A stretch of 64,000 nucleotides of DNA. Source: Octopus sinensis (lineage: Eukaryota). The stretch spans positions 43,586,001 to 43,650,000 of the forward strand of contig NC_043001.1 in the NCBI RefSeq assembly GCF_006345805.1. Direction: 5' to 3'. A program made the translations under genes and the position numbers. The notes under the pieces were generated by a model. It was given only the letters and a program-made list of their open reading frames with translations, did no database searches and was not told the origin of the DNA. Shown piece after piece: positions 5,701 through 59,187 of this stretch. The stretch's first letter is position 1. Every line of letters begins with the position of its first letter.

Positions 5701-5724
5701 TGACCAGATAATAATAATAATAAT

Positions 5725-6968: not shown

Positions 6969-6970
<2 letters not shown>
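5725..6970 (+). mobile_element. Dong/R4-clade non-LTR retrotransposon, 5'-truncated and frameshifted
   Basis: RT thumb (RMHHPKSDIERLY), CCHC knuckle CRICGDGQETINHIISSC and restriction-like endonuclease motifs (RHD, NRPDIV, LIDVSIP, KYKDL). Flanked on both sides by (TAA)n. Confidence 0.92.
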
Positions 6971-7017
<47 letters not shown>

Positions 7018-7050
7018 TAATAATAATAATAATAATAATAATGATAATAA

Positions 7051-10000: not shown

Positions 10001-10197
10001 ATAATTTTCGGTTTAAAAAAAAAAAAAAAAAAAAAAACTTTTTTTTTTAGACATTCATTAGTACAACATCCCCACCCCCCAAATATATGGCACACTAGGC
10101 ATAACAACAACATGAACTTCCAACCCTGTTGTCTCTTGAGGTCTCTGGGTGAGACTGGGAGCCAACTTGTACAAATATAAAGCAAAAGTCAAACATA

Positions 10198-10200
<3 letters not shown>
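7051..10200 (+). mobile_element. Dong/R4-clade non-LTR retrotransposon (RT + CCHC + RLE), 5'-truncated, near-intact coding region
   Basis: ORFs 7063-7680 and 7809-9980. RT motifs YRPITCL, WIDYKKAFDS, FQGDSLSPLLF, YMDDLKL, YKYLG. CRVCKQQNETIDHVVSKC and NRPDII/LIDMTVP/KYKDL. Ends in a (TAA)n tail at ~10200. Confidence 0.96.
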
Positions 10201-10266
<66 letters not shown>

Positions 10267-10284
10267 GGGCAGCATGTGGGAGGT

Positions 10285-10496
10285 GGGTATGAGATGATTA
10301 CATCAACTCCAGGGTTCAACTGGTACTTATTTTATTGACCCTGAAAGGACAAAAGGCAAAATCCTGAAAGGACAAAAGGCAAAGGATGAAAGGCGAAGTT
10401 AACCTTGGTGGAATTTGAACTCAGAATGTAAAGATGGATGAAATGCTACTAAGCATTTTTCCTGACATGCTAATGATTCTGCCAGCTCACCACCTT
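10285..10496 (-). mobile_element. tRNA-derived SINE with Nin/Deu-like core
   Basis: Minus strand gagctggcagaatc ... ttctgagttcaaattcc ... ctttcatccttt ... aataagtaccag. Other copies at about 4855-4985, 10600-10800(-), 11250-11445(-), 12470-12680, 23385-23500, 27075-27260, 52505-52690 and 63740-63900(-). Confidence 0.8.
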
Positions 10497-10518
10497 AATA
10501 ATAATAATAATAATAATG

Positions 10519-10588
<70 letters not shown>

Positions 10589-10806
10589 TGCTTCAAATTT
10601 TTACACAAGGCCACAATTTAGGAGAAGAGGGGGTTTAGTTGATTACATTGACCTCAGTGCTCAACCAGTACTTATTTCATTAATCTGAAAATGATGAAAC
10701 ACAATCAGCCTCAGCAGAATTTGAACTCAGAATGTAAAGCCAGAAGAAATGCCATTAAGCTTTTTGTCCGACATGCTAACAATTCTGCCAACTCACTGCT
10801 TTAATG

Positions 10807-10869
<63 letters not shown>

Positions 10870-13657: not shown

Positions 13658-13975
13658 AATCTTTAATCCTGGGTTGTGAAGAAATTAAATCAAAGCACCA
13701 AATAATGAAAGAGGATCTTCATGTGCAATGCTACAAGAATACACAACACAAGTTCAAAGATTCAATATATCAGTGTGGCATAATTCCTAACAGTTTTGCT
13801 AATAACATTTGGCTAATACTTCAAAACCAAAGGATTCATGTAAAAACATGCAAGGACTGTCATACAGACATGCATCCTTACTATCAGTATAACATTCCTA
13901 ATAAAAATATTGCAGATGGTTATTTACAATCAATTTTCTATGATTGTGACAAAGTATTTTGGTTCTTACATGTTA
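13658..13975 (+). CDS. Host gene exon B: second Cys-containing ectodomain module (divergent SUEL-like)
   Basis: Acceptor atttcag|, donor |gtaagt. 318 nt, phase 1-1, open. Encodes ESLILGCEEIKSKHQIMKEDLHVQCYK...YQCG...TCKDC...GYLQSIFYDCDKVFWFLHV (ORF 13705-14013 frame). LHVQC and YLxxxxYxC recall the SUEL termini. Confidence 0.75.
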
Positions 13976-16085: not shown

Positions 16086-16310
16086 ATACTGATGAGTGTG
16101 AAGGAATTTTCGAAGAATTCTTTTTGAAGACAAATTCTGGTAATCCAAAGTTTAATGGAAATGAAACAGTTGAAGAGAACATTACAGGTAGCTACCCAAC
16201 AGAAATTGAAACCATTTCTCATTATGTTGACACCACTTCCTTCTTGCCTTCCCAAGAAGTATCTTCTCTTCCCGGTTTCCACAATGTTGATAAAAGGATG
16301 TTTCCACGAG
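16086..16310 (+). CDS. Host gene exon C: Ser/Thr/acidic juxtamembrane stalk
   Basis: Acceptor tttcatttcaaag|, donor |gtaaga. 225 nt, phase 1-1, open (ORF 16061-16336 frame). Encodes TDECEG...NGNETVEENITGSYPTEIETISHYVDTTSFLPSQEVSS..., with sequons NET and NIT. Confidence 0.78.
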
Positions 16311-16908: not shown

Positions 16909-18134
16909 CTGGGTCATCCCATAAATAATGCGGTTTTTTCAATAGCATGAACTAAAAGTTGGAGGAGGACATGATAAACTACCTACATCAACTTATTACA
17001 AAAGCAGGTAGTAATTTTAACTTCCCTTATTCTTGGTGCAAGTTTTGAAAAGTGCAGTTCGATTTTAACAGTTATTTTTTTAAAGCTATAATGGAAGTGA
17101 CAAAGGAGCATATTAAAGTATATTTTGCTTTATGAGTTCAATAAAGGCAACAATGCAACGGAAAGTGCAAGGAATATTAATACAGTATATGGGGACTGGA
17201 CAATAAGTGTAAGCCAGTGTCAATGGTTGTTCCAGAAATTCTGAGTAGGTAACTACAGCCTAGAAGATGAGCCTCATCCTGGAAGACCTGTATAACTCGA
17301 TGAGGATGTCCTGCAAAACGTGGTGGAACAAAATCCCATCATAACTGTTGAGGAACTAGCAGAGAAGCTTGGATTTGGTCATTCAACCATTCATCAACCC
17401 TTGTGTGCCATCGGAAAAGTCAGCAAATTGGGTCAATAGGTTCCTCACAAACTTTCCGAGTTTAATCGAGTGCAGAGAGTGAATGTGTGCTCTTCTTTGC
17501 TGTTATGTCTCACAAATGAACCTTTTTTGAACTGAATAGTGACTGGTGATGAGAAATGGGTTCTCTATAAAAATGTCAAGTGCCGAAGACAGAAAGGAGA
17601 AAAATCGGCACCCCAGGCTAAAGAAGGTCTTCGGAAAGGTTTAGTCCACTTTGAACTTTTAAACCCAAACCAAACAATAACAAAAGAGATCTACTGTGAG
17701 CAGCTTAAGCAGCTTAAATCAGTGCTAGAAGAAAAACGACCATCTTCGGTTTCAAGACAAAAGGTGTTCTTCCATCAGGATAATGCTTGGTCACATACTG
17801 TGAGGATGATATTCCAAAGGCTGGAGCAGTTTGAATGGGAAACAATGCCCCATCCACCATATTTGCCAGACATTGCTCCATCTGATTATCATTTATTTTG
17901 CAGTCTTCAAAATCATTTGGACAGAAAAAATATGGATTCTGTAGATGAGGTCAGAACAGTGCTAGAGGATTATTTTTCATCACAGACAAGTGAATTTTGG
18001 AAGAGGGGATAGATGGAAGAGCATTGTAGAAAATGAAGGAGAGTATATTTTAGATTAAAAAAGAACCTTTGTTTTTCTTAATTTTGAAAAATGAAAGAAG
18101 TATAAAAAACTGCATTATTTATGGAATGATCCAG
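16909..18134 (+). mobile_element. Full-length but defective mariner transposon (D,D34D)
   Basis: ~30-bp TIRs (ctgggtcatcccataaataatgcggtttttt / aaaaaactgcattatttatggaatgatccag) with TA on both sides. VTGDEKW, FHQDNA and APSDYHLF motifs. In-frame stops and frameshifts. Confidence 0.95.
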
Positions 18135-20049
18135 TATATCCCTTTTTTAATATCTTAAACTCCTCCTACAAAAACAGATTAGTTTCTAAGAACAAACCCC
18201 TATCTTCAGAATTCAGATAACAACAACAATATTTAGTAACATGGTGAACTTAAGAAAAATCTGGTATATTTTCACTGTTCTGCTTGCAGAATGAATTTGG
18301 TGGGTAAATGTTTTTGGTAAATACTAACATAACCAAGTGTTTCCATGATTAATAGTACAAATGTAAATTTATAATCTGGGAAGAGAAGCTGTAGGTTTCA
18401 AAACAGTTGATCACAAATATTTTATTTTTCACTGATTTTGAATGAAATGTTCCCTTGTACACAGACTTTTTTCTCTGTTTCAAACGACTTTAACAACTCT
18501 GTTGTGTTTGAATTTAGTGAGTGTTTTGATTGGAATGTATTGAAATGCATGGATATACTAAGCATTTGAAATATTTTTTATAACAGTCCCAGAGAAGTCT
18601 TTTCTAAGAGTGGCATTGAATATTGTTTTAGCAAAAACACCATACTGCCTTGGAAGAAATAGTACCTATATGATATTTTGTAGCAGTTGCTGATCATGAA
18701 AACACATCTTATCTTCCACAAATATGTGATATAACCGACATTTTTTAGTTCAATTGGTATTCAATTGATATTTTTTACTCCTGGGTTACAAAAGCATAAT
18801 TTTCAACTTTATGGGAAACATGCACACATATAATGTTTTATCATCTAGGTATCTGCTAAGATCAGTTTGTCTGGCAGTTCTGGGGTCACATGGAACATCT
18901 TCAAGAACTAAGTACTTCTTGAATTGATCACTCCTAGTCTAAATGATATTACTCCCTTCACGTTTGAGCACTTTGTTAATGTATTTGTTTTTGTTACTGT
19001 TATTTAACCAGGTGCTGTCTGAGTGATACCACACAGCAGTAAAAAAAATGCCTGTTTTTTTCCCTCCCTCTTTCTTTTGAGATAGAATCAGAAAACATTC
19101 CAGTACTCTGTTAGACACAAAATATTAATTTGAATTCTGTTGCCTTTCTATTTTAACTTTATCCTATTGTTTCTTTTTTTATTTTACAATTTGATGTGTA
19201 ACAGTTGTGTTCATTATTTAATCATTTTAAACTTGTGGACTGATATCATAATTTGGCTTTTGAATTTTGGTTGATACACTTTATTTTGCTGATGCCGTTC
19301 AGAAACATAAAGATGTTGCTAAATTTCACTTTGCTTTCTCTTAAAATTTAAATCCCTTTAGCATGTCTAACTAAATCATTATTTGATAAATTTGTTACCT
19401 CTTTCCAAGTTAAACACTTGTGAGGATCATTTCTCTTTTATCTCCTATAGGATGACTAAAACAAGTTCCATAAATATAAAAATAATTCGATTTTTTTATC
19501 AAATATACCCTCTCTCTTTGGCCTTGTACGGAGCCAAAACAAATTAATATTTGATCAATTTGTTGATAGTGGTATGAAGTTTGTTGCAAAATTGTGTGTG
19601 TGATTTAGTTTCAGCTCGCAGTTGAATTTGTTCCACTTATATCATTGACATCCTTATAACTGATAGAAAACCATAGTGCCCTGTGCATTTTAAGCTTCAT
19701 ACTGTTTAAACATATCATTAATTAATTTCAAACCAGATGTCAAATAAGATGCTTTATTGTATCTTGTTTGATGTCTTGCTATTTTGAATTTAAGTCCTAC
19801 CAGTATTAAATTTAACTTTAGATTATTCTGAGTATCACTAAACTCACTGATATATTTGGGACTGATTCAATTGAGGAACATGTCATTTATCTATTTGTGC
19901 ATAATCAAGACAAACCAATATTTTATAACCTTGTATATAATAACCTTTTTTTCACACATTTATATGATGATATGATTTCAGTTTCAGAATCCTAAATAAT
20001 GTACAAACATAAATGGAGTAGATTAGTGAGAATTTATTTCCTTCAACGT

Positions 20050-20054
20050 TCATA

Positions 20055-20141
<87 letters not shown>

Positions 20142-20223
20142 ATATGTATATATATATGTATGTATATATATATATGTAATATATATATGTATATATATAT
20201 ATGTATGTATATATATATGTATA

Positions 20224-20260
<37 letters not shown>

Positions 20261-20279
20261 GTATATATATATGTATATA

Positions 20280-20328
<49 letters not shown>

Positions 20329-20504
20329 TATTATATGTATATATATATATTATATATAATATATATGTATATATATATATGTATATAATAATAATAATAA
20401 TAATAACAATAACAATAATAACAATAACAATAACAATAATAATAATAATAATAACAATAACAATAACGATAATAATAATAACAATAACAATAACAATAAC
20501 AATA

Positions 20505-20536
<32 letters not shown>

Positions 20537-20550
20537 TTAATAATAATAAT
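20050..20550. repeat. Compound microsatellite (AT/ATGT then AAT/AACAAT)
   Basis: Read directly from the sequence. Confidence 0.95.
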
Positions 20551-20552
20551 AA

Positions 20553-20835
20553 TAGTAATCCATGGATGAAATTTATAGATATTTTAATGCATCACTATGT
20601 GTGTTTCCACAAATCACATATTTCTTTCAATCATAGTCCGTATTCCTGGGGTGATTACAGTACAGTCCATAGTATCCCTGGACATCAGGTGGATCATGTT
20701 CATATGCTAATTTCCTCAGATGATATGGCCATCACTCCAGGAATATGGACTATGATTGTAAGAAACATGTGATTTGTGGAAAAATGCACAGCAATGCATT
20801 AAAAAATTTCATAAATTCCATCCATGGATTATTAT
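20553..20835. mobile_element. Fold-back/MITE-like element with ~100-bp TIRs (short copy)
   Basis: Arms 20557-20655 and 20731-20830 are imperfect reverse complements (aatccatggatg...catagtcc.tattcc). Same family as 58490-58940. Confidence 0.8.
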
Positions 20836-22632: not shown

Positions 22633-24680
22633 TGTATGTATTAATCAATGAAATTTCAATTTAGTCTGATTTTCATTTTTTATTATTTCCACTTTTCCAA
22701 TTTTTCCAATTTTACAATATTGGAGTAATCTAGTACTTTCATGTGTTACACAATCATTAGGTTTATGTAGTGACAGTTGTGCTCCACAATTAACAACTGT
22801 GGTGAAATGGTTAGATTTGTCCTTTAAATACCTGCCAATGAGCTCCAGCAGGCTGAATGTTACGACCTGTATTTTAACCAATTAGTATGTAGCTTAGATG
22901 TCATGATTTGGTGAGCATGCCAACTAAGTCAGTATGTGGCTTAGATGTCATTATTTGGTGAATGCACCAACTTGGTTAGCATTTATCCTGGTTTTTTCGA
23001 CAAGATGTTTTATCTTAATTGGTGTGCAGCTAGGACATCACAGTTTGGTGTGTACGTCAAAGATTCTTTACTTTGACTGCACCTAAAGGAATAATTGTTT
23101 GATAATATTTTGGAATGTTGTAAACAATGTTCCTGTTTTCATAGAATTCTATTGTTACAGTTTTTCAGAAATTTTACATTTCAATCAAGTCAGTGTTGAT
23201 ATGATTAACACTACTACTATCCTCACCACCACCTTTATTATTATTATTGTTAGTGGTGGCAGTGGTAGTATTATTATTATCATCATTACAATTATCACTA
23301 TTACTATAATTGTTATTATACTGTTATTAACTGTTATTAGTATTAACGGTTATTACTATAAGTGTTATTAGCAGTATTTCACTCATCGCTATGTTCTGAG
23401 TTCAAGTTCCTTCGACTTTGCCTTTCATCCTTTCAGGGTCAATAAATTAAGTACCAGTGAAACACTGGGGTCGATGTACTCAACTAGTCTCCTCTCCCCA
23501 ATAGTAGAAAGGACCATTATTGTCCATTTAAAACAGGTTTGAATTTACCAATAAAATTCTTTACTCTGACTTTTCTCTTTACTTCACCTGTGTAAATGTC
23601 TTCTACTGTAGCCTTAGACAGACCAATACCTTGTGGCTGAATTTGGCTGACGGAAACTGCAGGAAACCTGTCATACACACATACACTCACATACTAACGA
23701 AAAATATATATATCTGTGAGTGTGTCTGTGTATGTGTATATATGTGTGTGTGTGTGCGCTATGTATATGTGTGTGTATGTGTGTGAAGGCACGTAGCTCA
23801 GTGGTTAGAGTGTTGGGCTCACAATCATGAAGTAGTAAGTTTGATTCCCAGACTGGACTGTGTGTTGTGTTTTTGAGCAAGACACCCTATTTCCCATTGC
23901 TCCAGTTCACTCAACTGTAGAAATGAGTTGTGACATCACTGATGCCAAACTGTATCAGCCTTTGCTTTTTCCTTGGATAACACTGGTGGTGTGGAAAGGG
24001 GAGGCTGGTGTGCATGGGTGACTTCTGGTTTTCCATAAGCAAACTTGCTGGGAATTGTGAGCAAATGTTGAAGACAGTGACAAAAACATACACAACACAA
24101 ATGTAAATATGAAAACAAAATGAATTTACAATAGACAAACAAAATAAGGCTGTGCAGCTCTAAGATAAGATAAGTGTAAGGGTAATGCAAAGGAAAGGAA
24201 AGGAAAATGTCCGATGGAACTGGAAACAAAAAAGGGGACAAATGGAAAAACAGAATGGTGAAAAAAAAAAAAACCAAACCATGCTGAAAGTAAAGAAGGA
24301 AGTGAGAGAAATGTGACAGAATGAATTAGTGGTCAGGAAATATAGGTAGATATGTATAGAACTTCTGATAAGCATGTGTGTGATAGCTGACAATTTAGCA
24401 TGTTTTTTTTAGAATTTTGCTCTTACATACTAAAGAAGAAAGACTTATTAATTTACTCATAGGTTGTGAAGTGAAAGCCAAACTCCAACTGTGCTTTGCA
24501 TTTCATCTATTTGGGTTTTACAAAATAACTTTCTTGCATGTATTAGGTTTGAGTTAATCAACTACTCTACTTCCTTACACATAATCTGTGGTCTATCATC
24601 TTTGCTAAAACATGAACAGCATTTTCTTTTATATATTTTTTTAACGTATATCTATATATATATATATTTTTTTTTTTCAG

Positions 24681-24765
24681 AAATTGTCAATTACTTAACA
24701 ATTGGAATTGCTGGTGGACTAACACTTATCACTTTAACTGTGTGTTTTATTGTCATTTTGAGAAG
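24681..24765 (+). CDS. Host gene exon D: transmembrane helix
   Basis: Acceptor tttttttcag|, donor |gttagt. 85 nt, phase 1-2. Encodes EIVNYLTIGIAGGLTLITLTVCFIVILR(R): a hydrophobic helix followed by basic stop-transfer residues (RRPKQK after splicing). Confidence 0.9.
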
Positions 24766-24850: not shown

Positions 24851-25396
24851 ACAATTCCAAACCTTATCTTTAGAACCTTTATATAGTGCCTCAACTTATA
24901 CCTCATTCTTCTTAAGCCTGCTTTGTTCCTACTTCAAAGTGGAGCAATTATGTGAAGTAGCAGAAAAAAAAAAGTCTACCTAAGTTGTCAGAAGAAATGA
25001 TTGAAGATGAAAATCGAACAGAATGTCCAGTTGAGTTTGATGATAAGCTCCTTGAGGCATTACTTGAAGAAAATCCTGCATTATCAGTTGAAGGATTGGC
25101 AATAAAATTTAGTTCAAACCATGCAACTGTTCATTGTCATCTTCAACAACTTGGAATGATTCTTAAACTTGAAAAATGGGTGCCTCATGAATTGTCTGAA
25201 AGCAACCACAAATACCGAGTTGACATTCTGTTGATTTTCATCTTCAATCATTTCTTCTGACAACTTAGGTAGACTTTTTTTTTTCTGCTACTTCACATAA
25301 TTGCTCCACTTTGAAGTAGGAACAAAGCAGGCTTAAGAAGAATGAGGTATAAGTTGAGGCACTATATAAAGGTTCTAAAGATAAGGTTTGGAATTG
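24851..25396. repeat. Long inverted duplication (~175-bp arms, ~195-bp spacer)
   Basis: ~24851-25027 is the reverse complement of ~25222-25396, apart from a 1-nt indel near the inner end. The right arm is bracketed by the 8-bp direct repeat gttgacat (25219-25226, 25396-25403). Confidence 0.93.
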
Positions 25397-26112
25397 TTGA
25401 CATCTGCTCTTCTTTTCATTCTCGTGAATTCATTTCACCCTTTTTGGATGGACTTGTGACTGGTGACGAAAAATGGATGTTCTATCGAAATGTTAAACAT
25501 TGTAAACAGTGGTTTGGTAAAAGGGAAAAATCTCAACCACAACCGAGAAGGGAACTTATGGGGAAAAGGTTCTTTTCTCTATCTGGTGGGATTGCAAAGG
25601 AGTAATTCACTTTGAATTGCTACCACCTAATGCAACAATCAATGCTCAAGTCTACTGTCAGCAATTAGAGCATTTGAACCAAGCTTTGAAGAAAAAAAAA
25701 CCCGCTTTAGTGAATAGAAAAGGAGTGATGTTTCATCAGGACAATGTGCGATCCCACACTGCAAAGATTATATCACAGAAGATCGAAGAGCTTGTTGGGA
25801 AAAAATTCCTCATCCACCTTATTCTCCCGACCTTGCTCCTTCAGACTACCATTTGTTTTGTAGTTTACAGAATCATTTGGGTGACATAACTTTTGCAAGC
25901 CAGGAGGAGGTCGAAACTGACATTTCAGAGTTCTTTGCTTTGAAAGCAAAAGAGCTTTACAATGATGGGATTAAAAAGCTTGTAAATAGATGGAAGGAAG
26001 TCGTAGATAATCAGGGAAAGCACATTGATGATTAAATTTCAATTAAATATAACATTTGATCACTTGTTTTCTTTATTCAAAATTTGGACAGAATTTATAG
26101 GATGACCTGATA
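25000..26112 (+). mobile_element. Defective mariner (5'-truncated, interrupted by the inverted insert)
   Basis: EDENRTECPVEFDD, KWVPHEL, VTGDEKW and FHQDN motifs across broken frames. Right TIR ggatgacctga-TA. Confidence 0.92.
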
Positions 26113-26920
26113 GATATATACATATATACATATGTACGATGGGCTTCTTTCAGTTTCTGTCTACCTAATCCACTCACAAGACTCTGGTCGGCCTGAAGCT
26201 ATAGCAGAAGACACTTGCTCAAGTTGTCATACAGTGGGACTGAACCCTGAACCATGTGGTTGTGAAGCAAGCTTCTTACCACACAGCCACGTCTGTGCCT
26301 ATATATGATTACTTGAAATCTGAAAATTGCCCTGCCCATTCTAACTTGGAAATAAGATATGATGTGTGTGTGTGTGTGCACGCGTGTGTGTACACGTGTA
26401 TTAGTGGAGGTGTGTGGCTTAGTGATTAGGGCAATTAGCTCACAATCATAAGGCTGTGAGTTCAATTCTCTGCAGCACGTTGTGTCCTTGAAGGAGACAC
26501 TTTATTTTACATAGCTTCAGTCCACTCAGCTGGAAAAATGAGTAATACCAGTAGTTCAAAGGTCTGGCCCAGTCACATTCAGTGTCATGCTGAATCTTTC
26601 TGAAAACTTTGTTAAGGGTTTGCATGTCTGTGGAGTGCCACTTGCATATTAACTTCATGAGTAGGCCATTCCTTCGATTGAATCAACTGGAACCTGTGTC
26701 GAGATAACTGACAGAGTGCCAGATATATATATATGTATATATAATTGAAAAATGTTGTAGAAAACACAGTTTTTTCAATTATCTATTCATACACAACAGA
26801 AGCCCAGATGCAAACCTGGAAATACCTATAATACTACTACTCTATAGCACTGGGTGAAATCTGAAGGTGGACAAGCTTTATACTGTATTCTACTACATTT
26901 TTAACAGAATATACCATGAC

Positions 26921-27000: not shown

Positions 27001-27795
27001 TATATGCAAACAGGAAAATAGAGCTCAAAACATGAATATATTTGTTTTCCTTATTATTAACAATTGATGAGGATGTGAGCTGGCAAAAATGCTTAGCAGC
27101 ATTTCTTCTGACTTAACATTCTGAGTTCAAATGCCATCAGGGATTAACTTTGCTTTTCATTCTTTTGAGAGTCAATAAAATAAGTACCAGTTGAGTACTG
27201 GAGTCGATGTAATCAACTTGACTTCCTCCCAAAATTACTGGCCTTGCACAAAAAATTTGAAAACCATTATTAACAACTGACAGATGTTACAGAATAACCC
27301 GAGAATTGCTTTTTGTGCATTAGTGCTTATCAATAAGTGTCAATGCATGAATCTCTTTGCCATTGAGCCATTCTGTAACTTCTGCCAATGATCAATAATA
27401 AATGTGTGTGTGTGTGTGTGTGCGTGTGCAAGCTTTTTCTTTGTTAGTTTCATTATTGAGTGATAAGATTTCCTAAAATTAAAACAGCTGTGTAGAGTAT
27501 CATTGAAGTTATTTCGGAATAGAATTACATTGGATATAATTTGGTATTGGATCAGGATGTAGAACTACAAATGACATATTCTCAGAAAAACAGCTGCTAA
27601 GAAAAAAACCACTGGGCTTTACATTTATCAGTCAACAGTAAACCATTGATAGGTTCCTTCACTCTGCAGCGTAGGGAAAGATAGGGAACCTAGATATACC
27701 ACTTTTCTGATTGGTACATTTTCACAATTTAATCTGCTGAGCCATGAATCCATCTAACGTAATTTATCCATCTTTATATGTCTATTGTATGTGTG

Positions 27796-27875
<80 letters not shown>

Positions 27876-27932
27876 AATAACCATTTTAATTGACATTATG
27901 TTTAACTTTCTCTTAATTTTGATTTATTTCAG

Positions 27933-28839
27933 ACCAAAGCAAAAATCTGTGGCAGCTCCACCATCTTCAGCAACTGGTTTATATGGTTGTACTCACCTTC
28001 CTGAGAATTTTGATGCTGCTTCACCAGAGGAAGAGAATACTTATTTTACTGTTGAAGCTGATGATGATGAAATTATTCAGAAAAAAGTTGAGGAAAACAC
28101 TTACAATTGTATTGATGAAGTTAAAGGGTCAAACCAGGATCCTGTTGTTGAGCGCTATAGTAAATTAAGGAGTCCAAGGACAGTGTTAGAGAAGATACCC
28201 TCTTCGACTATCAAAGACAACTATGATCAAATTGTTGAAGAAATGGTTCAGGGTAGAATGAATTCCACCTGTCCCAGAACAAAGAAAGCAAAGCAGAATG
28301 GATCTCTGAGAAAAACAGGTAGCCTTCATCGGCAGGCATCAAAAGATTCAACAGCAAAGCCAGGTTCTCCAGAGGTTAATGAGGCTATAGTATATAAAGA
28401 AGTTCCATGTTATCAATGTTCTTCTCTGTCTCCAGAATATTTTGACCGTGCCCTTCCATCAGCTCCTCTGATGGAAAGTGACAGTGCATCAGAGCCTGAT
28501 GCGATTTATGAGAGAGTTGATGATTTACTCACTTCTGATCAGGACAGGAACAACAGTCAGGTTAATGACATTTATGAAACTGTTACAGAGCCAAATGAAT
28601 TAAAAAGTCAGTATTCCACATTCCAAAGGCAAACAGATGGTAAAGTTGGTGAAAATAACTCACTAAACAACTCTTTAAGAGATAAAAAACCTGCAATTGC
28701 CAATGGTAATCTTCAGCCACCAAGAATTTATGACCATATCTCTGACAAATGGAACGACACAGATAAGCCACTTCATCTCATTCCATCTGATGAATATGTA
28801 TATACACAGTTACAAGATGACACTACACTAGGGTCATAA
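27933..28839 (+). CDS. Host gene terminal exon E: ~300-aa Tyr-motif-rich cytoplasmic tail
   Basis: Acceptor atttatttcag|. Phase 2 matches exon D (AG|A = Arg). 907 nt open to TAA (ORF 27778-28839). Non-repetitive sequence with motifs YFTV, YNCI, YSKL, YDQI, YKEV, YERV, YETV, YSTF, YDHI, YTQL. Confidence 0.92.
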
Positions 28840-29169: not shown

Positions 29170-29184
29170 CGTTAATTTTTATAG

Positions 29185-29580
29185 GCATAGGAGTGGCTGT
29201 GTGGTAAGTAGCTTGCTTACCAACCACATGGTTCCAGGTTCAGTCCCACTGCATGGCACCTTGGGCAAGTGTCTTCTACTACAGCCTCAGGCCGACCAAA
29301 GCCTTGTGAGTCGATTTGGTAGACGAAAACTGAAAGAAGCCTGTCGTATATATGTATATATATATATATATGTGTGTATATGTTTGTGTGTCTGTGTTTG
29401 TCCCCCCAACATGGCTTGACAAAAGATGTTGGTGTGTTTACGTCCCTGTAACTTAGCGGTTCGGCAAAAGATACCGATAGCATAAGTCCTAGGCTTACAA
29501 AGAATAAGTCCTGGAGTTGATTTGCTTGACTAAAGTGGGTGCTCCAGCATGGCCACAGTCAAATGACTGAAATAAGTAAA
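29185..29580 (+). mobile_element. Composite tRNA-derived SINE (head + CORE-like + TA/TG microsatellite + 3' module)
   Basis: ggagtggctgtgtggtaag...ccttgggcaagtgtctt...(TA/TG)n...gtgctccagcatggcc...gactgaaa. Copies at about 26145-26300(-), 39845-40228, 46050-46400(-), 49085-49385, 50968-51362, 58965-59090 and 59445-59630. Confidence 0.85.
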
Positions 29581-29981: not shown

Positions 29982-30176
29982 GAGTGTGTTACACTCCCAT
30001 TTCAAAAGGCAGATGTTCTTGAGTGTGTTACACTCCCATTTCAAAAGGCAGATGTTCTTGAGTGTGTTACACTCCCATTTCAAAAGGCAGATGTTCTTAA
30101 GTGTGTTACACTCCCATTTCAAAAGGCAGACGTTCTTGAGTGTGTTACACTCCCATTTCAAAAGGCAGATGTTCTT
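29982..30176. repeat. Minisatellite, 5 x 39 bp
   Basis: Unit gagtgtgttacactcccatttcaaaaggcagatgttctt at 29982, 30021, 30060, 30099 and 30138. Only isolated substitutions. Confidence 0.97.
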
Positions 30177-30505
30177 GACTATAATGTTTCAATGTGAAAT
30201 AGATGTCAGTAAGATTTAGAGAGTAAGGAGATAAGCAAAAAACTAATGAATATTTCTGAATAATATGTAATAAAAGGTGATTTATTATTATTATTATTAT
30301 TATCATCATCATTATTATTGTTTGATTGCATTTAATGGAGTGGGGATGCATTTCTAATACAGTCTGAGGAGATAAATATATTTAACTGCAAGACAGTCAA
30401 AGTTAAAGGTCTTGTTTCAATTTCTGATGAAATAAATGTTTCTTTTATACAACTGTCTCTTTCTTATACACCCTTCTTGTTCATCATAACACTGGACTAT
30501 GTTTT

Positions 30506-39667: not shown

Positions 39668-40515
39668 GTTATTATAATGATTCATACTATTACTCATCAA
39701 ACTATTAGTTATTATCATTATTATTACTACTACTAGGGGTGTATTGGATTTTCCTATGGTAGCCTAAATTGTGCTCATGCTCTACTTAACATTTAAACGC
39801 ACTAATTGACTTATTTGTCCAAATTATTTATCATTGTTATATATTGGCTGTGTGGTAAATAGCTTGCTTACCAACCACATGGTTCCTGGTTCAGTCCCAC
39901 TGCATGGTACCTTGGGCAAGTGTCTTCTACTATAGCCTCAGGCTGACCAAAGACTTGTGAGTAGATTTGATAGATGGAAACTGAAAGAAGCTCGTTGTAT
40001 ATATGTATATGTATATATGTGTGTGTGTGTGTTTGTATGTCTGTGTTTGTCCGCCCAACATTGCTTGACAACCGATGCTGGTGTGTTTACGTCCCCGTAA
40101 CTTAGCGGTTCAGCGAAAGAGACCAATAGAATAAGTACTGGGCTTACAAAGAATAAGTCCTGGGGTTGATTTGCTTGACTAAAGTGGGTGCTCCAGCATG
40201 GCCGCAGTCAAATAACTGAAACAAGTAATAGATATATATATATGTGAGTGTGTGTGTGTATATTTGCGTGTGTGTTACTGTTTCCTTGCCAGGACAATGC
40301 ATAATAGTTGTAAATGAGTGTAATTGTCATGCAAGTGGTATCTTTTGTTTTCATTCTTCTGTGAAAACATTTCTGATCAAGGGGAAATATTATCTTACAA
40401 GGAAAGGTTAGTGACAAGAAGGGCATCTGATTGTTGTAAATCTACCTCAGCAAATTCCATCTAACTATGGAAAAGAGGATGTTAAAAATTTAAAACATTG
40501 ATGTTGATGATGATA

Positions 40516-42779: not shown

Positions 42780-43250
42780 TTTAAATAAAATATTAGTAAT
42801 ATGTAGTAGATAGAAGGATCCATTGGAAGGGTCCTATTGGTTTTTTTCAACAATCTAAGTATGTCATGAGGTTTCCAGACATGTGTTCTACTCATGTGTC
42901 AAATAAAGCATAAATGTGATATTGTCTGCAAAAATTAGAAATAGGACACACGAAAAAATCAATATTCAAAGTAATTGAACATAACAATGTTCCCCTTATT
43001 TCCCTTGAGTGTTTTAAAAAAATATTGTACAGGTGCTATGAGTTATTTCCCTTGGGTATTTAAAAAAAATAGTTATATGAGGTAGATATAAAGGTCCCTT
43101 CCAGGAGCTGTATTATTGATTTTTTTCAACAATCTAAGTATATCATGAGGTATCCATACATGAGTTCTACTCATGTGTCAAGTTTCATCAAAATCAATAA
43201 AATGATGTAGGAGGAGTTAGCTAACAATGCCACAATTACCAATTTTCCAC
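42780..43250 (+). mobile_element. Probable Helitron-associated element with two diverged internal repeats
   Basis: Block tttttcaacaatctaagta...catgagg...ttctactcatgtgtcaa occurs at ~42840 and ~43120. The second is followed by gtttcatcaaaatc...aggaggagttag. Confidence 0.4.
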
Positions 43251-43254
43251 ATAT

Positions 43255-43318
43255 GTAGTATATATGTGTGTGTGTGTGTGTATGTATTATATGTATACAT
43301 ATGTATGTATATATATAT

Positions 43319-43373
<55 letters not shown>

Positions 43374-43599
43374 ATGTATATATATGTATGTATATGTATG
43401 TATATGTATGTATGTATATGTATGTATATGTATATATGTATATGTATGTATATGTATGTATGTATATGTATGTATATATATGTATGTATGTATATATATG
43501 TATATATATGTATGTATGTGAATATATGTATATGTATGCATGTATATATATGTGTATATATATGTATATACATGTATATATATGTATATATATGTATGT
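43255..43599. repeat. AT/ATGT microsatellite
   Basis: Read directly from the sequence. Confidence 0.95.
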
Positions 43600-43952
43600 A
43601 TACAAGATAAGAAAATGGAGAAATACATCTAAATCAAATATCAATTACCAGATAATACTCAATCACATACTTTATTAAACCACCACATAAGAGACTGTAG
43701 GGTTAGATATAAAAAGCATAACAACTCAGTGTACAGAAAGGAATGTACATAAAAAAGTGTACATAAAAAAGTAATGTTTACTTTTTTATGTACACTTTTT
43801 TATGTACATTCCTTTCTGTACACTGAGTTGTTATGCTTTTTATATCTAACCCTACAGTCTCTTATGTGGTGGTTTAATAAAGTATGTGATTGAGTATTAT
43901 CTGGTAATTGATATTTGATTTAGATGTATTTCTCCATTTTCTTATCTTGTAT
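43600..43952. repeat. Perfect palindrome, 175-bp arms, 3-nt spacer
   Basis: 43600-43774 is the exact reverse complement of 43778-43952 on manual comparison. Spacer tgt. Confidence 0.97.
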
Positions 43953-44124
43953 TAGTAATTTGTGGTAAATCATTTTACCTTTGCCCATATAATACAGTAA
44001 ATGAATTGATTGCATCACAGTCATTAACATTTATGTATTAACTTTGTTGGGTACTTCACTAGCAGTATATTGAAAATATATTATCCCATGGAGGGTTGCA
44101 TTTACAACCCCTATCTCAATTTGT

Positions 44125-44304
44125 ATATATATGTATGTATATATATATATGTTTGTATATATGTGTATGTATATATAAGTATATATATATGTATATATTA
44201 TATATGTATATGTATGTATATATATATATATATGTATGTATATATATATGTATGTATATGTATGTATATATATATATATGTGTATATATATATATATGTA
44301 TATG

Positions 44305-44346
<42 letters not shown>

Positions 44347-45335
44347 GTATGTATATATATATATATATATGTAATGTATGTATATATATATATGTATATG
44401 TATGTATGTATATATATAATGTATATGTATGTATGTATATATATATTATGTATATATATAATATATATATATATATAATATATATATATATATATGTATG
44501 TATATATATATATGTTATGTATGTATGTATATATATATATGTATATGTATATGTATGTATATATATATATATTATATGTATATGTATGTATATATATATA
44601 TATATGTATATGTATGTATGTATATATATATATGTATATGTATGTATGTATATATATGTATATGTATGTATGTATATATATATGTATATGTATGTATGTA
44701 TATATATATATATGTATGTATGTATATATATATATGTATATGTATGTATATATATATATGTATATGTATGTATGTATATATGTATATGTATGTATGTATA
44801 TATATATATGTATATGTATGTATGTATATATATGTATATGTATGTATATATATGTATATGTATGTATATATATATGTATATGTATGTATGTATATATATA
44901 TATGTTATATGTATGTATATATATATGTATATGTATGTATATAATATATGTATATGTATGTATATATATATATATGTATGTATGTATGTATATATATATG
45001 TATATATGTATATATGTATATATATGTATATGTATATGTATTATATATATATATGTATATATATGTATATGTATATGGATATATATGTATATGTATATAT
45101 ATATGTTATATATGTATATGTTTATATATGTGTATATATATATATTATATATATATATATGTATATATATATGTATATATATGTATATGTATATATATAT
45201 GTGTATATATATGTAGGTATAAGTATATATATATGTATATATATATGTATATATATATATATGTATGTATAAGTATATATGTATATATATATGTATGTGT
45301 GTATATATATATATGCACACACACATACATATATG
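44125..45335. repeat. ~1.2-kb compound (AT)n/(ATGT)n/(ATATGT)n microsatellite
   Basis: Read directly from the sequence. Source of the long Y/I/M/C/V ORFs. Confidence 0.97.
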
Positions 45336-45344
45336 TATTTCCCC

Positions 45345-46050
45345 AATCCTGTCCTCTTGACCCTGTCTCACTCTACCATCAGGCATTTGAAAGGAACACA
45401 AAACGGACAAATTACATCTTCATATAAGGAGATTTACATACATGTAGTCATATAATGGTCCTTGAATGCTTGCATCAGAGATGTCTGAGATACATTCTGA
45501 ATGTTGGCTGGACCTTAAAAATTCCCGACACACAAGTCCTGAGGACAGCTTATATCTTGAGTATTGATGGTGCACAGGCACCAGTTACGTTGGACTGGAC
45601 ACTTTATTAGAATGAAGGATAGCAGAATCCCTAAGCAGATGCTTTATGAGGAAATTGTTAATGGAAAGAGACCCCAGCAGAAACCAAGATTGCAATTTAA
45701 GGACTGTATCAAGTCTTCATTAAAGCCCTGTGATATGCAGGAGGCTGACTGGGAGAGCATGGCCTGTCATCACCACAGATGGAGGAAGTAGGTTAAAGAG
45801 GGGGCAAACACCTTTGAGAGAGCACATATTCTGCATGAAGAATTTAAGCATACTGCTCAAAAGTGCACTGCTGGTGTAGTGAATGGGGAAAGCTTGGGTT
45901 TCAATGTTTGCAGTCGTGTATGCTTGTCAAGAGCAGGGCTCATTAGCCACCAACAGAGCCGCAGATGCAAAATATAAGTTAGTCCTAGAGCGCCCAATGT
46001 TCCTGAAGGTCAGCAATGGTCTTCCTCAATCATGATTGGACAACCATCAT
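45345..46050 (+). mobile_element. RTE/BovB-like LINE 3' fragment
   Basis: RHQLRWTGHFIRMKDSRIPKQMLY...KPRLQFKDCIK...DWE and a terminal C2H2-like CNVCSRVCLSRAGLISH. Confidence 0.85.
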
Positions 46051-47334
46051 GTATGTATGAGTGTATTTTTTTGTATTTGTTTCAGTCATTTGACTGGCCA
46101 CTGCCTTTAGTTGAACAAATCTACCCCAGGACTTATTCTTTGTAAGCCTTGTAAACACACCAACATTGGTTGTCAAGTGATGGTGGTGGTGGTGGGGGCA
46201 AACACAGACAAATATACACACACGCACACATATATATACATATATATGATGGGCTTCTTTCAGTTTCTGTCTACCAAATCCACACACAAGGCTTTGGTCA
46301 GCCCAAGACTATAGTAGAAGACACTTGTCCAAGTTACCATACAGTGGGACTGAACCTGGAACCATGTGCTTGGCTAGCAAGCTACTTACCACACAGCCAC
46401 TCCTGCACTTATGTATATGTTTGTGTTTCTTTGTCTTGACATTACATGATAGTTGTAAAAGAGTGTCACTCTCACACAAGCAGTGTCATTCATTTCCAAT
46501 TTTCTGCAAAAACATCTCTGACTGTGGGGAAATTATTCCTTTGCTTGAAAACAGGTGAGGGTTGGTGACAAGAAGGGTCTCCAGCTATAGAAAATGTACC
46601 TCAGTAAACTCTGTTGAACCCATGTGAGCATAGAAAAGCAGAAGTTAAAACAATGATGATGAGGAGGAGGAGCATGTGAGTGTAGAGTGCTTCAACATTT
46701 TATCTTCAAAGATCAATTCTCTGAGTTCACAATTTCATCCGACAATGAAAATAAACTATTTGAGTTAGTTGTAATGCATCGCCAAAAAGTAAAGAATGAG
46801 TGAAAGAATGAGTTAAGCATGTGACTGGTAACTGTGAACAAGAAATACATAGGTTAATTGAGTCCAAAATGAATAAACAAGCTATTAAGTAAATGCATAA
46901 AAGCATGATAACTGTCAGCTTAACAAACAGGAAGAGTTTTAGTGTAAATGACTTGTTCTTGTTCTCTGGTTGGTTGCATGCTTAGTGGTGTCATAAAGTA
47001 GGATATGTGGTAAAGGAATCAGCAATGAAGCAGATGAAATGGTTGTGTATGGGATTTGTGAGAGGTGTTTATATATATGTAACATACGAGATTAAGATAT
47101 TTTTTTATCAGGGTGGGACAACTCACTTAATTAAAAAGTAAGTTATGTTTGGCAATATGAGGTTCTTGATAAAACCTGCAAACCTCAGTGAAGCTGAGTT
47201 CTGAGAGCACTATGTAAATTGTGCTCTCCACCCACATGTTACATTGATTCAATGCCTTCCACTGAACCAAATTACCTCCTATCATGCTCTTTGTCTGCTC
47301 TCCTCAACTCCACTTCTGCAGTCTACCCAATCAT

Positions 47335-49051: not shown

Positions 49052-49087
<36 letters not shown>

Positions 49088-49537
49088 TATAGTCTCAGGC
49101 CCACCAAAGCCTTGTGAATGGGTTTCATACATGGAAATAGAAAGACAACAGTTGTATATATGTGTATATTTGTGTGTGAGTGTGTGTGTGTGTGTGTGTT
49201 TGTACTCCCACCATCGCTTGACAACTGATGTGGCTGTGTTTATATCCCTGTAACTTAGCTGTTGGGCAAAACACACTGGTAGAATAAATATTAGGCTTAC
49301 AAAGAATAAATCCTGGGGTTGATTTCTTCGACTAAAGGCGGTGCTCGTGCATGGCTGCAGTCACATGACTGAAACAAGTAATACAATAAAAAATTATGCC
49401 ATTTTAATCCCGAGCAACGCCGGGTATCTCTGTTAGTGTGTATATATATATATATATATATGTATGTATATGTGCACAAATGTATATACATGTATTTGTA
49501 TGTATACGCAAGCATGTGTGTGTGTGTGTGTGTCGCG

Positions 49538-58940: not shown

Positions 58941-59187
58941 TATTATATATGTATATATATAGGTGCAGGCATGGCTGTGTGGTAAGACATTTCCCGCTGT
59001 GTTGGCACCTTGGGCAAGTGTCTTCTACTATAGCATCGCACTGAAAGCCTTGTGATTTGGTAGGCAGAAACTGGATGTAGCCCATCATATATATATATAT
59101 ATATATAATAATAAATATTAGGGAATAAATCCAAATTTACAGGGAAAAATGAGATTTAGGATTGAATCCAATTTTATAGTAAAATAT

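What the first reader, a model, noticed from the sequence alone, without database searches (positions are those of the whole stretch)
27933..28839. Single-exon ~300-aa cytoplasmic tail with 10 YxxPhi motifs (ITIM/SH2-docking-like array)
Seen: 14 Tyr. Ten sit in YxxPhi contexts, many preceded by acidic residues: EEENTYFTV, EENTYNCI, ERYSKL, DNYDQI, IVYKEV, DAIYERV, DIYETV, QYSTF, RIYDHI, EYVYTQL. EENTY and IY[ED]x[VI] recur, suggesting internal motif duplication. IVYKEV fits the ITIM consensus. No catalytic domain is visible. Established: acidic-pY-xx-hydrophobic sites are Src-family substrates and SH2 docking sites. Inference: the protein signals as a phosphotyrosine scaffold like immune or allorecognition receptors, a class poorly described in cephalopods.
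Basis: partly seen in the sequence, partly recalled or inferred. Interest (0 to 1): 0.7.

Follow-up and report, generated by a model that had tools for sequence, protein, structure and literature searches.

The report
Tyrosine-motif tail of octopus membrane protein
This is the last exon of an uncharacterised Octopus sinensis gene; it encodes the probably disordered cytoplasmic tail of a single-pass membrane protein, and seven of its tyrosine motifs are conserved in a distant relative, so it most likely acts as a phosphotyrosine docking scaffold, an ordinary kind of protein from a family nobody has described.

Summary
Window 27933-28839 (+) is a terminal coding exon of 301 codons with 14 Tyr, 10 of them in YxxPhi (P about 2e-5 against composition). 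It is exon 4 of Octopus sinensis LOC115212129 (XP_029636830.2, "uncharacterized"). Joining the four GT-AG exons in the window reproduces that 495-aa protein exactly. The preceding 85-nt exon encodes the transmembrane helix.

A sister-octopus genomic contig keeps all 14 Tyr (89% aa identity, dN/dS 0.27). Only one other lineage (two contigs of unknown taxon) has a relative among 1.84 billion representative proteins, at 26-28% identity. It has the same 85-nt TM exon, the same intron phases, and 9 of its 10 Tyr in YxxPhi. Seven of the ten octopus motifs sit at homologous positions. The single ITIM-like site (IVYKEV) does not.

No Pfam or PDB relative was found. There are no Grb2, p85, Crk, PTB, ITAM or ITSM motifs. 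Internal duplication is not significant.

The best reading is a lineage-restricted, non-catalytic phosphotyrosine scaffold. It works like vertebrate transmembrane adaptors (PAG/Cbp, LAX) but is not a member of those families. The ITIM, immune and allorecognition labels are unsupported. Phosphorylation and the exon 3-4 transcript junction remain untested.

The parts
13705..13975 (+). Exon 1 of the NCBI model (ATG to a phase-1 donor gtaagt), 90 aa with 5 Cys and no signal peptide. It is the weakest part of the model.
   Evidence: Joining the four exons translates exactly to P0001. There is no Pfam hit, no homolog, and no counterpart in L002.
16086..16310 (+). Exon 2 (phase 1-1), 75 aa, the presumed extracellular stalk with NxS/T sequons (NGNETV, NITG).
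   Evidence: splice sites caaag|AT and GAG|gtaaga. No Pfam hit. Not conserved in L002.
24681..24765 (+). Exon 3, 85 nt, encoding the transmembrane helix (E)IVNYLTIGIAGGLTLITLTVCFIVILR(R). It contains a GxxxG-like GIAGG and one Cys, both conserved.
   Evidence: Mean Kyte-Doolittle hydropathy is 2.4 over 22 residues. L002 7126-7210 carries an exon of identical length and phases. 15 of 32 residues are identical in the aligned stretch, which in octopus includes 3 residues of exon 2; tblastn E 2.4e-6.
27933..28839 (+). Exon 4, the terminal coding exon: 301 aa, acidic (net charge -17), compositionally disordered cytoplasmic tail, plus the stop codon.
   Evidence: dN/dS is 0.27 against sister-octopus contig L001. 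Mean hydropathy 0.391 lies below the Uversky boundary of 0.434.
28033..28053 (+). Conserved motif 1, ENTYFTV (Y37). L002 has EAMYFVI.
28090..28119 (+). Conserved motif 2, EENTYNCIDE (Y57). L002 has EENTYNSIDE, 9 of 10 residues identical.
28216..28233 (+). Conserved motif 3, DNYDQI (Y97). L002 has DMYDHI.
28480..28527 (+). Conserved motif 4 with its acidic/Ser-rich lead-in, DSASEPDAIYERVDDL (Y192). L002 and L003 have DSESDSDAIYEQVDEL.
28567..28584 (+). Conserved motif 5, DIYETV (Y214). L002 and L003 have DIYESV.
28726..28752 (+). Conserved motif 6, IYDHISDKW (Y266, W273). L002 has IYDHLNENW and L003 has TYDHLNENW.
28798..28812 (+). Conserved motif 7 near the C-terminus, VYTQL (Y290). L002 and L003 have IYAHL. 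It is a candidate Csk-class SH2 site (inference).
28387..28404 (+). IVYKEV (Y154), the only ITIM-consensus site. The sister octopus keeps it as LAYKEV. It is absent at the homologous place in L002 and L003.
28150..28167 (+). ERYSKL (Y75), an octopus-only YxxPhi not conserved in L002.
28612..28623 (+). YSTF (Y227). The Tyr is replaced by Cys in L002 and L003, while STF is kept.

Best explanation
Window 27933-28839 is the last coding exon of Octopus sinensis LOC115212129. It encodes the whole cytoplasmic tail of a single-pass membrane protein with the N-terminus outside and the C-terminus inside. The tail is acidic, probably disordered and has no enzyme domain.

It most likely works as a phosphotyrosine scaffold. 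Seven conserved Y-x-x-(V/I/L) sites would be phosphorylated by Src-family-type cytoplasmic tyrosine kinases. Four of them have the form (I/V)-Y-(D/E/T/A)-x-(V/I/L), and several are preceded by acidic residues. Once phosphorylated, they would dock SH2-domain proteins at the membrane. The YE(R/T)V and YD(Q/H)I sites fit the Src-family/Nck class. The C-terminal Y(T/A)(Q/H)L site fits the Csk class.

In function this resembles vertebrate transmembrane adaptor proteins such as PAG/Cbp or LAX. By sequence it belongs to a separate, lineage-restricted family.

Shown here: the exon is real, selected and conserved, and it is linked to the TM exon. Also shown: the motifs are enriched and positionally conserved, and other motif classes and domains are absent. 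Inferred: phosphorylation, SH2 docking, the identity of kinases and partners, and the biological process.
For: (1) Gene model. The four exons with canonical GT-AG sites translate exactly to XP_029636830.2.
(2) Selection. The sister-octopus genomic contig L001 is 93.7% identical in the CDS against 74% in the upstream intron. Its dN/dS is 0.27 and all 14 Tyr are kept.
(3) A distant relative, P0003/L002, was found by exhaustive HMMER (E 5.6e-7 in 1.84e9 proteins). It has a collinear tail exon and, 2.66 kb upstream, a TM exon of the same 85 nt with the same intron phases. The TM-plus-tail unit is therefore ancestral.
(4) Motif statistics. Octopus has 10/14 Tyr in YxxPhi (P 2.4e-5) and L002 has 9/10 (P 1.2e-6). 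I/L/V/M at -1 occurs in 6/10 L002 sites (P 0.0014).
(5) Positional conservation. Seven of 10 motifs are retained with Phi at +3. Residues around Tyr are 34% identical against 19% elsewhere (P 0.003). The four C-terminal motifs are also kept in the third relative, L003.
(6) Both tails fall on the disordered side of the charge-hydropathy boundary, and no domain is detected.
(7) Established knowledge. Vertebrate TRAPs have a single TM and a non-enzymatic tail with Tyr motifs that Src/Syk kinases phosphorylate as SH2 docking sites (PMC3342071). PAG/Cbp carries YEEI/V-type Src-SH2 sites plus a YSSV Csk site (PMC3492796). The v-Src SH2 binds pYEEI with the +3 Ile in a hydrophobic pocket, and YDxV binds Nck (PMC3507883).
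Against: There is no experimental or transcript evidence for phosphorylation, for expression, or for the exon 3-4 junction.

YxxPhi is also the AP-complex sorting signal and the core of LIR motifs, so the sequence alone cannot discriminate between these.

The modelled N-terminal 171 aa lack a signal peptide and have no homolog, so the topology and ectodomain of the mature protein are uncertain.

Unlike LAT, PAG and NTAL, there is no juxtamembrane CxxC. There is also no sequence homology to any TRAP family.

The AlphaFold single-sequence model was uninformative (pLDDT 33 everywhere, including the TM), so disorder rests on composition only.

The conservation statistics rest on one deep comparison. 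The taxa of L002 and L003 are unknown.
Confidence: 0.55

Rival explanations
1. The YxxPhi motifs are tyrosine-based sorting signals that bind the mu subunits of AP-2, AP-1 or AP-3. On this reading the tail mainly controls endocytosis and trafficking of the protein rather than phosphotyrosine signalling.
For: YxxPhi is exactly the AP mu-subunit consensus (established knowledge). Phi at +3 is kept in all seven conserved motifs. The tail is compositionally disordered and so would be accessible.
Against: One or two signals are enough for sorting, and 9-10 per tail in two lineages is unusual. Sorting signals do not require the conserved Ile/Val at -1, the acidic residues upstream or Asp/Glu at +1, whereas these features are typical of tyrosine-kinase substrates and SH2 ligands (own knowledge). 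The conserved context around the motifs, such as DS.S..DAIYE.VD.L, extends well beyond a 4-residue sorting signal. The two functions are not mutually exclusive.
Confidence: 0.15
2. This is the first reader's version: an ITIM-type inhibitory immune or allorecognition receptor that recruits SHP-type phosphatases.
For: IVYKEV fits [SILV]xYxx[ILV], and the sister octopus keeps it as LAYKEV.
Against: Only one ITIM-like site exists. It is absent at the homologous position in L002 and L003, whose only ITIM-like match (SYYGSV) lies elsewhere. There is no ITSM and no second ITIM. No Ig, lectin or other receptor ectodomain was found. The modelled ectodomain has no homolog, and no paralog array exists in the window.
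Confidence: 0.07
3. The conserved acidic-aromatic-x-x-hydrophobic islands are ligands that do not depend on phosphorylation. They could be LIR/Atg8-interacting motifs or short amphipathic binding helices, in which Tyr serves only as an aromatic anchor.
For: Acidic residues followed by [WFY]xx[LIV] is the core LIR pattern (own knowledge). The AF2 model places short helices around residues 386-394 and 401-404 of P0001, which is the DAIYERVDDLL region, but at very low confidence.
Against: At all seven conserved positions the aromatic residue is Tyr in every sequence available, never Phe or Trp. That is what one expects if the hydroxyl matters. LIR arrays of 7-10 copies are not known to me. The motifs fit the extended xLIR pattern poorly (own inspection).
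Confidence: 0.06
4. This is a gene-model artefact: the exon is not a functional coding exon of a TM protein, or Gnomon wrongly joined it to the TM exon.
For: No transcript sequence was available. Exons 1-2 are unsupported, and the model lacks a signal peptide.
Against: The open frame is 301 codons long in a 35% GC genome. dN/dS is 0.27. Motif islands are conserved in a relative with about 26% identity. The TM exon and tail exon are conserved as a pair, in the same order, phases and exon length.
Confidence: 0.03

Closest known systems
PAG1/Cbp (Csk-binding protein), a vertebrate transmembrane adaptor
   Same: Both have a single TM helix followed by a long non-enzymatic tail: 301 aa here, 397 aa in PAG. 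Tyr counts are similar, 14 here (10 in L002) against about 10 in PAG. Both carry acidic YE.V-type motifs of the Src-SH2 class plus one Y-(S/T/A)-x-hydrophobic motif of the Csk-SH2 class (PAG YSSV; here YTQL/YAHL) (PMC2213442 abstract, PMC3492796, PMC3342071).
   Different: No sequence homology was detected by HMMER against 1.84e9 proteins or by Pfam at E<=10. There is no juxtamembrane CxxC palmitoylation motif. No proline-rich SH3 sites are conserved, and there is no C-terminal PDZ ligand (the tails end TLGS, DNFG and DNFS). The modelled N-terminal part is 171 aa rather than 16. Csk binding has not been tested.
LAX1 (and LIME, SIT): non-raft or other TRAPs
   Same: They share the architecture of a TM helix plus a disordered tail rich in Tyr motifs. 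Like LAX, this protein lacks the CxxC motif (PMC3342071).
   Different: The LAX, LAT and NTAL tails are dominated by YxN Grb2 sites, and LAX also has a YxxM. This tail has no YxN, YxxM or YxxP motif at all. There is no sequence homology.
ITIM-bearing inhibitory receptors (e.g. PECAM-1, SIRP-alpha, PZR)
   Same: There is one [SILV]xYxx[ILV] site, IVYKEV.
   Different: It is a single site and is not conserved. There is no Ig or lectin ectodomain, and no paired ITIM/ITSM.
Nephrin-type YDxV Nck-docking tails
   Same: YDQI and YDHI (I/L) resemble the YDxV Nck-SH2 motif (PMC3507883).
   Different: There is no Ig/FnIII ectodomain and no homology. The +3 residue here is I/L rather than V, and binding is untested.

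Membership tests
Transmembrane adaptor proteins (TRAP class: LAT, NTAL, PAG, LAX, LIME, SIT), a functional class defined in PMC3342071 | Single transmembrane helix | tested here: met
   Exon 3 encodes LTIGIAGGLTLITLTVCFIVIL (mean hydropathy 2.4) followed by RR(P)KQK. It is conserved in L002.
Transmembrane adaptor proteins (TRAP class) | Cytoplasmic tail with several Tyr-based motifs and no enzymatic activity | tested here: met
   The tail has 14 Tyr, 10 in YxxPhi. There is no Pfam domain and no PDB relative.
Transmembrane adaptor proteins (TRAP class) | Very short extracellular part (a few to about 20 aa) | tested here: inconclusive
   The NCBI model puts 171 aa before the TM, which does not meet the feature. 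However, exons 1-2 have no signal peptide, no homolog and no counterpart in L002, so the true N-terminus is unknown.
Transmembrane adaptor proteins (TRAP class) | Juxtamembrane CxxC palmitoylation motif (LAT, NTAL and PAG have it; LAX does not) | tested here: not met
   No CxxC follows the TM. There is only one conserved Cys, inside the helix (TVCFIVILRR in octopus, SVCVSVLFKK in L002).
Transmembrane adaptor proteins (TRAP class) | Tail tyrosines phosphorylated by Src/Syk-family kinases and bound by SH2 proteins | not testable with these tools
   Only the sequence context is available: I/V at -1, acidic residues upstream and Phi at +3.
PAG/Cbp, LAT, LAX, LIME, SIT and NTAL sequence families (Pfam has models for these, from memory) | Detectable sequence homology | tested here: not met
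   hmmscan against Pfam-A at E<=10 returned only PP1_bind, below its cut-off. phmmer against 1.84e9 representatives returned only P0003 and a spurious repeat protein.
ITIM inhibitory receptors | [SILV]xYxx[ILV] motif(s), usually two or an ITIM plus an ITSM, conserved among orthologs | tested here: not met
   There is one site (IVYKEV). The sister octopus keeps it, but it is lost at the homologous position in L002 and L003. No ITSM is present.
ITIM inhibitory receptors | Ligand-binding ectodomain (Ig or C-type lectin) | tested here: not met
   No Pfam domain was found in P0001 or in the open frames of exons 1 and 2.
ITAM signalling subunits | YxxL/I-x(6-12)-YxxL/I | tested here: not met
   The regular expression found no match in either tail.
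AP-complex tyrosine sorting signals | YxxPhi in an accessible cytosolic tail | tested here: met
   The motif is present 10 times. Whether it actually binds mu subunits cannot be tested here.

The most novel reading that the evidence does not exclude
The protein is an independently evolved, cephalopod-lineage functional analogue of vertebrate PAG/Cbp. It would be a membrane scaffold whose IYE.V and YD.I sites capture active Src-family kinases. Its conserved C-terminal (I/V)Y(T/A)(Q/H)L site would recruit Csk, closing a Src-Csk negative feedback loop. I know of no invertebrate membrane anchor for Csk of this kind, and the literature searches here turned up none (own knowledge).
Probability: 0.15. 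Interest if true: 0.6.

Novelty: new member of a known kind. Interest (0 to 1): 0.33.

Why it matters
If the tail is a real phosphotyrosine scaffold, it adds a lineage-restricted, sequence-orphan member to the class of transmembrane adaptors. That class has so far been described almost entirely in vertebrate immune cells. It would also give a concrete, testable entry point into tyrosine-kinase signalling in cephalopods: seven defined sites, a small protein and a simple gene. It is one more example of docking scaffolds built from short linear motifs in disordered tails, which are invisible to homology search. The practical value is modest, because the mechanism class is well known and the biological process it serves is still unknown.

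Tried and rejected
- Pfam scans of the tail, the full protein and the open frames of exons 1 and 2 found nothing.
- A PDB sequence search with the tail profile gave only chance hits, to designed repeat proteins and SKA1, at E > 0.1.
- AlphaFold2 on the full protein without an alignment gave pLDDT 33 throughout. It is uninformative and is not used as evidence of disorder.
- The word-indexed search with the N-terminal 194 aa returned nothing, not even the query's own protein. It therefore says little beyond 'no extra relatives'.
- Two scans of JGI metagenome contigs, with the tail alignment and with P0003, found no relatives.
- P0004, the second HMMER hit (E 1.6e-5 against the TM region), is a 727-aa tandem-repeat translation. 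I rejected it as spurious.
- The internal-repeat test was not significant (the first attempt, timed out).
- A search of the 13.6 kb upstream in the window for a signal-peptide exon (ATG, a hydrophobic core, and a GTRAGT/A donor in phase 1) found no candidate.
- tblastx of the window against L002 found no conserved ectodomain exon. It found only the TM exon, the tail and transposon fragments.
- Literature searches for the locus name, the sample accessions and cephalopod ITIM/SH2 topics found nothing relevant.
- Songyang 1994 (PMC358643) was not available, so the Csk SH2 motif rests on memory.
- ITAM, ITSM, YxN, YxxM, YxxP and NPxY were considered and rejected: none occurs in either tail.
Full report
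**1. What is at the coordinates**

The window is AT-rich, repeat-laden animal DNA. On the + strand a strong acceptor (tttgatttatttcag|A) ends at 27932. Base 27933 completes a split codon, the reading frame runs from 27934, and a TAA stop lies at 28837-28839.

The 301-aa product carries 14 Tyr. Ten Tyr have L/I/V/M/F at +3, although those residues make up only 18.6% of the tail. The binomial P is 2.4e-5, and 1 of 100,000 composition-preserving shuffles reached ten.

Two details are weaker. The 'internal duplication' (EENTY twice, IYE.V twice) is reached by about 9% of shuffles. Only one site, IVYKEV, fits the ITIM consensus. The 353-aa ORF that a bacterial-style ORF finder reports from 27778 reads through an intronic (TG)29(GA)16 microsatellite and is an artefact.

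**2. Which gene it belongs to**

The tail is 100% identical to the C-terminus of XP_029636830.2, 'uncharacterized protein LOC115212129 isoform X1' of Octopus sinensis. The gene lies on chromosome record CM016863.1 at about 43.6 Mb.

I mapped the model onto the window as four exons:
- exon 1, 13705-13975
- exon 2, 16086-16310
- exon 3, 24681-24765
- exon 4, 27933-28839

All introns are GT-AG, with phases 1, 1 and 2. Joining the four pieces gives 1488 nt that translate exactly to the 495-aa protein.

Exon 3 (85 nt) encodes little more than a transmembrane helix, (E)IVNYLTIGIAGGLTLITLTVCFIVILR(R), with mean hydropathy 2.4. The basic RRPKQK that follows places the tail in the cytoplasm by the positive-inside rule (established knowledge). 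Intron 3 (3167 nt) contains a decayed mariner-type transposon.

No other gene lies within 10 kb on either side, and the window holds no paralog.

**3. Is the exon under selection, and is it really tied to the TM exon?**

A 1.8-kb genomic contig from another octopus (L001, Logan SRR11869384) carries the same exon, with the same acceptor and the upstream (TG)n. The CDS is 93.7% identical against 74% for the short upstream intron stretch. The proteins are 89% identical, dN/dS is 0.27, and all 14 Tyr are kept.

An exhaustive phmmer search of the 495-aa protein against 1.84 billion representative proteins found only one real relative. This is P0003 (E 5.6e-7, 28% identity over the tail). A spurious repeat protein was also returned. 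A profile search added a third, partial relative, P0005.

P0003 lies on a 94-kb ENA contig of unknown taxon (L002). There the tail is again one terminal exon. It runs from 9868 to 10807, follows the acceptor cacag|G, encodes 312 aa and has the same phase. A tblastn search with the octopus N-terminal part found the TM exon 2.66 kb upstream, at L002 7126-7210. It is exactly 85 nt, has the same phases on both sides, and reads FILKVTAGIAGGLTLLTFSVCVSVLFK (E 2.4e-6).

The TM-exon-plus-tail-exon unit is therefore conserved across a divergence deep enough to leave 26% identity in the tail. I had no transcripts, so this is the best available, though indirect, evidence that the two exons are spliced together.

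The modelled ectodomain is a different matter. Exons 1-2 have no Pfam hit, no homolog anywhere and no counterpart in L002. The model has no signal peptide in front of 171 presumably extracellular residues. No candidate signal-peptide exon was found in the 13.6 kb upstream. The N-terminus of the real protein is unresolved.

**4.

Yes, for most of them. Between octopus and L002 the tails are collinear but only 26% identical. Seven of the ten YxxPhi motifs sit at homologous positions and remain YxxPhi:

| Tyr | Octopus | L002 |
|---|---|---|
| Y37 | YFTV | YFVI |
| Y57 | EENTYNCIDE | EENTYNSIDE |
| Y97 | YDQI | YDHI |
| Y192 | DSASEPDAIYERVDDL | DSESDSDAIYEQVDEL |
| Y214 | DIYETV | DIYESV |
| Y266 | IYDHISDKW | IYDHLNENW |
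| Y290 | VYTQL | IYAHL |

The last four are also present in the third relative, L003.

Tyr is the most conserved residue type with more than one occurrence. In the pairwise alignment 7/14 Tyr are identical against 70/287 for other residues (Fisher P 0.04). Residues within +/-4 of a Tyr are 34% identical against 19% elsewhere (P 0.003).

The relative shows the same bias independently. Nine of its ten Tyr are in YxxPhi (P 1.2e-6). Six of ten have I/L/V/M at -1 (P 0.0014), and five of ten have D/E at +1 (P 0.02).

Three octopus motifs are not conserved: Y75 (YSKL), Y227 (YSTF, which is CSTF in the relatives) and Y154 (IVYKEV, the ITIM-like site).

Neither tail contains YxN, YxxM, YxxP, NPxY, ITSM or ITAM patterns.

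**5. Physical nature of the tail**

No domain is detected by Pfam or by a PDB profile search. Both tails are acidic (net charge -17 and -28). About 60% of their residues are disorder-promoting, and both lie on the disordered side of the Uversky charge-hydropathy line (0.391 against 0.434; 0.373 against 0.446). The AlphaFold single-sequence model had pLDDT 33 everywhere, including the TM helix, so I do not count it as evidence.

**6. Mechanism**

The conserved pattern has three parts: acidic residues upstream, Ile/Val at -1, and Tyr followed by a polar or acidic residue and an aliphatic residue at +3. This matches both the classic preference of Src-family and related cytoplasmic tyrosine kinases and the ligand class of Src-family-type SH2 domains. 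The kinase preference is from my own knowledge. The pYEEI mode of binding, with +3 Ile in a hydrophobic pocket, is described in PMC3507883.

YD(Q/H)(I/L) also resembles the YDxV Nck site (PMC3507883). The C-terminal (I/V)Y(T/A)(Q/H)L resembles the pY-(T/A/S)-x-hydrophobic preference of the Csk SH2 domain (Songyang et al. 1994, from memory) and the YSSV Csk site of PAG/Cbp (PMC3492796).

My best explanation (confidence 0.55) is a non-catalytic membrane scaffold. Its tail would be multiply phosphorylated by Src-type kinases and would then dock SH2 proteins.

- Shown: the exon is real, it is under selection, and it is linked to the TM exon.
- Also shown: the motifs are enriched and positionally conserved, and other motif classes are absent.
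- Inferred: phosphorylation, docking, partner identity and biological role.

Rivals:
- AP-complex sorting signals (0.15). These are not exclusive with the scaffold reading. The number of copies and the extended conserved context argue against them.
- An ITIM inhibitory or allorecognition receptor (0.07). This fails on conservation and on the ectodomain.
- Phosphorylation-independent aromatic motifs such as LIRs (0.06). The strict Tyr at every conserved site argues against this.
- A gene-model artefact (0.03).

**7. Comparison with known systems**

Functionally, the nearest class is the vertebrate transmembrane adaptor proteins (TRAPs). They have a single TM helix and a long non-enzymatic tail with Tyr motifs that Src/Syk kinases phosphorylate (PMC3342071). 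PAG/Cbp is the closest in motif content: a 397-aa tail, about ten Tyr, YEEI/V-type sites plus a Csk site (PMC2213442, PMC3492796).

Membership is a separate question and is not met:
- no sequence homology
- no CxxC motif
- no conserved proline-rich site or PDZ ligand
- a modelled N-terminal part far longer than that of a TRAP, although that part of the model is doubtful

I therefore file it as a new, lineage-restricted member of the functional kind 'transmembrane phosphotyrosine scaffold', not as a PAG, LAT or LAX homolog and not as an ITIM receptor.

The TM helix is more conserved than the tail. Fifteen of 32 residues are identical in the TM-exon tblastn hit (the octopus side includes three residues of exon 2), against 26% for the tail. 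The conserved residues include a GxxxG-like GIAGG and one Cys. This hints at helix-helix association or S-acylation, which is inference only.

**8. Verdict**

Novelty is 'new member of a known kind'. Interest is modest at 0.33: the family is real, conserved and previously undescribed, but its mechanism class is familiar and all functional steps remain untested.

The most novel reading still open is that this is an independently evolved Csk/Src feedback anchor analogous to PAG/Cbp (probability about 0.15).

Noticed in passing
window 24851-26060 (intron 3); also 1-329 and 17520-18009: These are decayed mariner-type transposase copies. The intron-3 copy has an inverted partial duplicate (24851-25307), and its 3' part is 95% identical to window 1-329. 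The 17536-18009 copy hits Pfam Transposase_1 (E 2e-10).
   Followed up: partly
window 5704-9977 (+): This is a LINE-like retroelement. A 776-codon open frame (7650-9977) carries RVT_1 (E 1.5e-26) and zf-RVT. It is preceded by open frames at 5704-7677, one of which also carries zf-RVT. It may be a recently active copy.
   Followed up: partly
window 29181-29480, 50968-51259, 39845-40129, 46151-46404(-), 26114-26303(-), 49086-49282, 59003-59552, 23585-23675: A SINE-like dispersed repeat of about 300 bp occurs in at least eight copies, 76-90% identical to each other. One copy lies 340 nt downstream of the gene's stop codon.
   Followed up: partly
window 29982-30178: A 39-bp tandem repeat (5.1 copies, 97% matches) lies 1.1 kb 3' of the stop codon. 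The sister-octopus contig has a single copy (L001 1655-1690), so the array expanded recently in this lineage.
   Followed up: yes
window 27786-27874: A (TG)29(GA)16 microsatellite lies 58 nt upstream of the tail-exon acceptor, and (TG)n is also present at the same place in L001. It makes a bacterial-style ORF finder extend the ORF to 27778, which is an artefact.
   Followed up: yes
window 13705-13975 and 16086-16310: The NCBI isoform X1 model has 171 residues before the TM helix. They contain 6 Cys and N-glycosylation sequons but no signal peptide. These exons have no homolog in any database searched and no counterpart in L002. An in-frame acceptor (tttcag|AA, about 13657) upstream of the ATG suggests a missing 5' exon.
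   Followed up: partly
window 24681-24765 and L002 7126-7210: The TM helix keeps GIAGGLTL (a GxxxG-like pattern) and a single Cys seven residues before the basic stop-transfer cluster in both lineages. It is more conserved than a plain membrane anchor needs to be.
   Followed up: no
window 19955-20590 and 43200-45420: Very long TA/CA-type low-complexity tracts are open in several frames on both strands. They produce long false ORFs (up to 414 codons).
   Followed up: no
window 59616-61480 (+): An open frame at 59616-60332 contains a YIDDC motif and looks like reverse transcriptase, but it has no Pfam hit at E<=0.01. About 1.2 kb of Pro/His/Thr-rich low complexity follows it (GC 47%, GC skew -0.53).
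   Followed up: partly
window 28264-28380 (tail residues ~111-149): A basic, Ser/Thr-rich patch (RTKKAKQNGSLRKTGSLHRQASKDST) carries RxxS-type basophilic kinase sites. The RK and GS residues are kept in L002. It may be a second, Ser/Thr-based layer of regulation.
   Followed up: no
L003 1-180: The third relative's contig (Logan SRR27666085) needs a frameshift near position 140-150 to keep the tail frame. This is probably a low-coverage assembly error.
   Followed up: no
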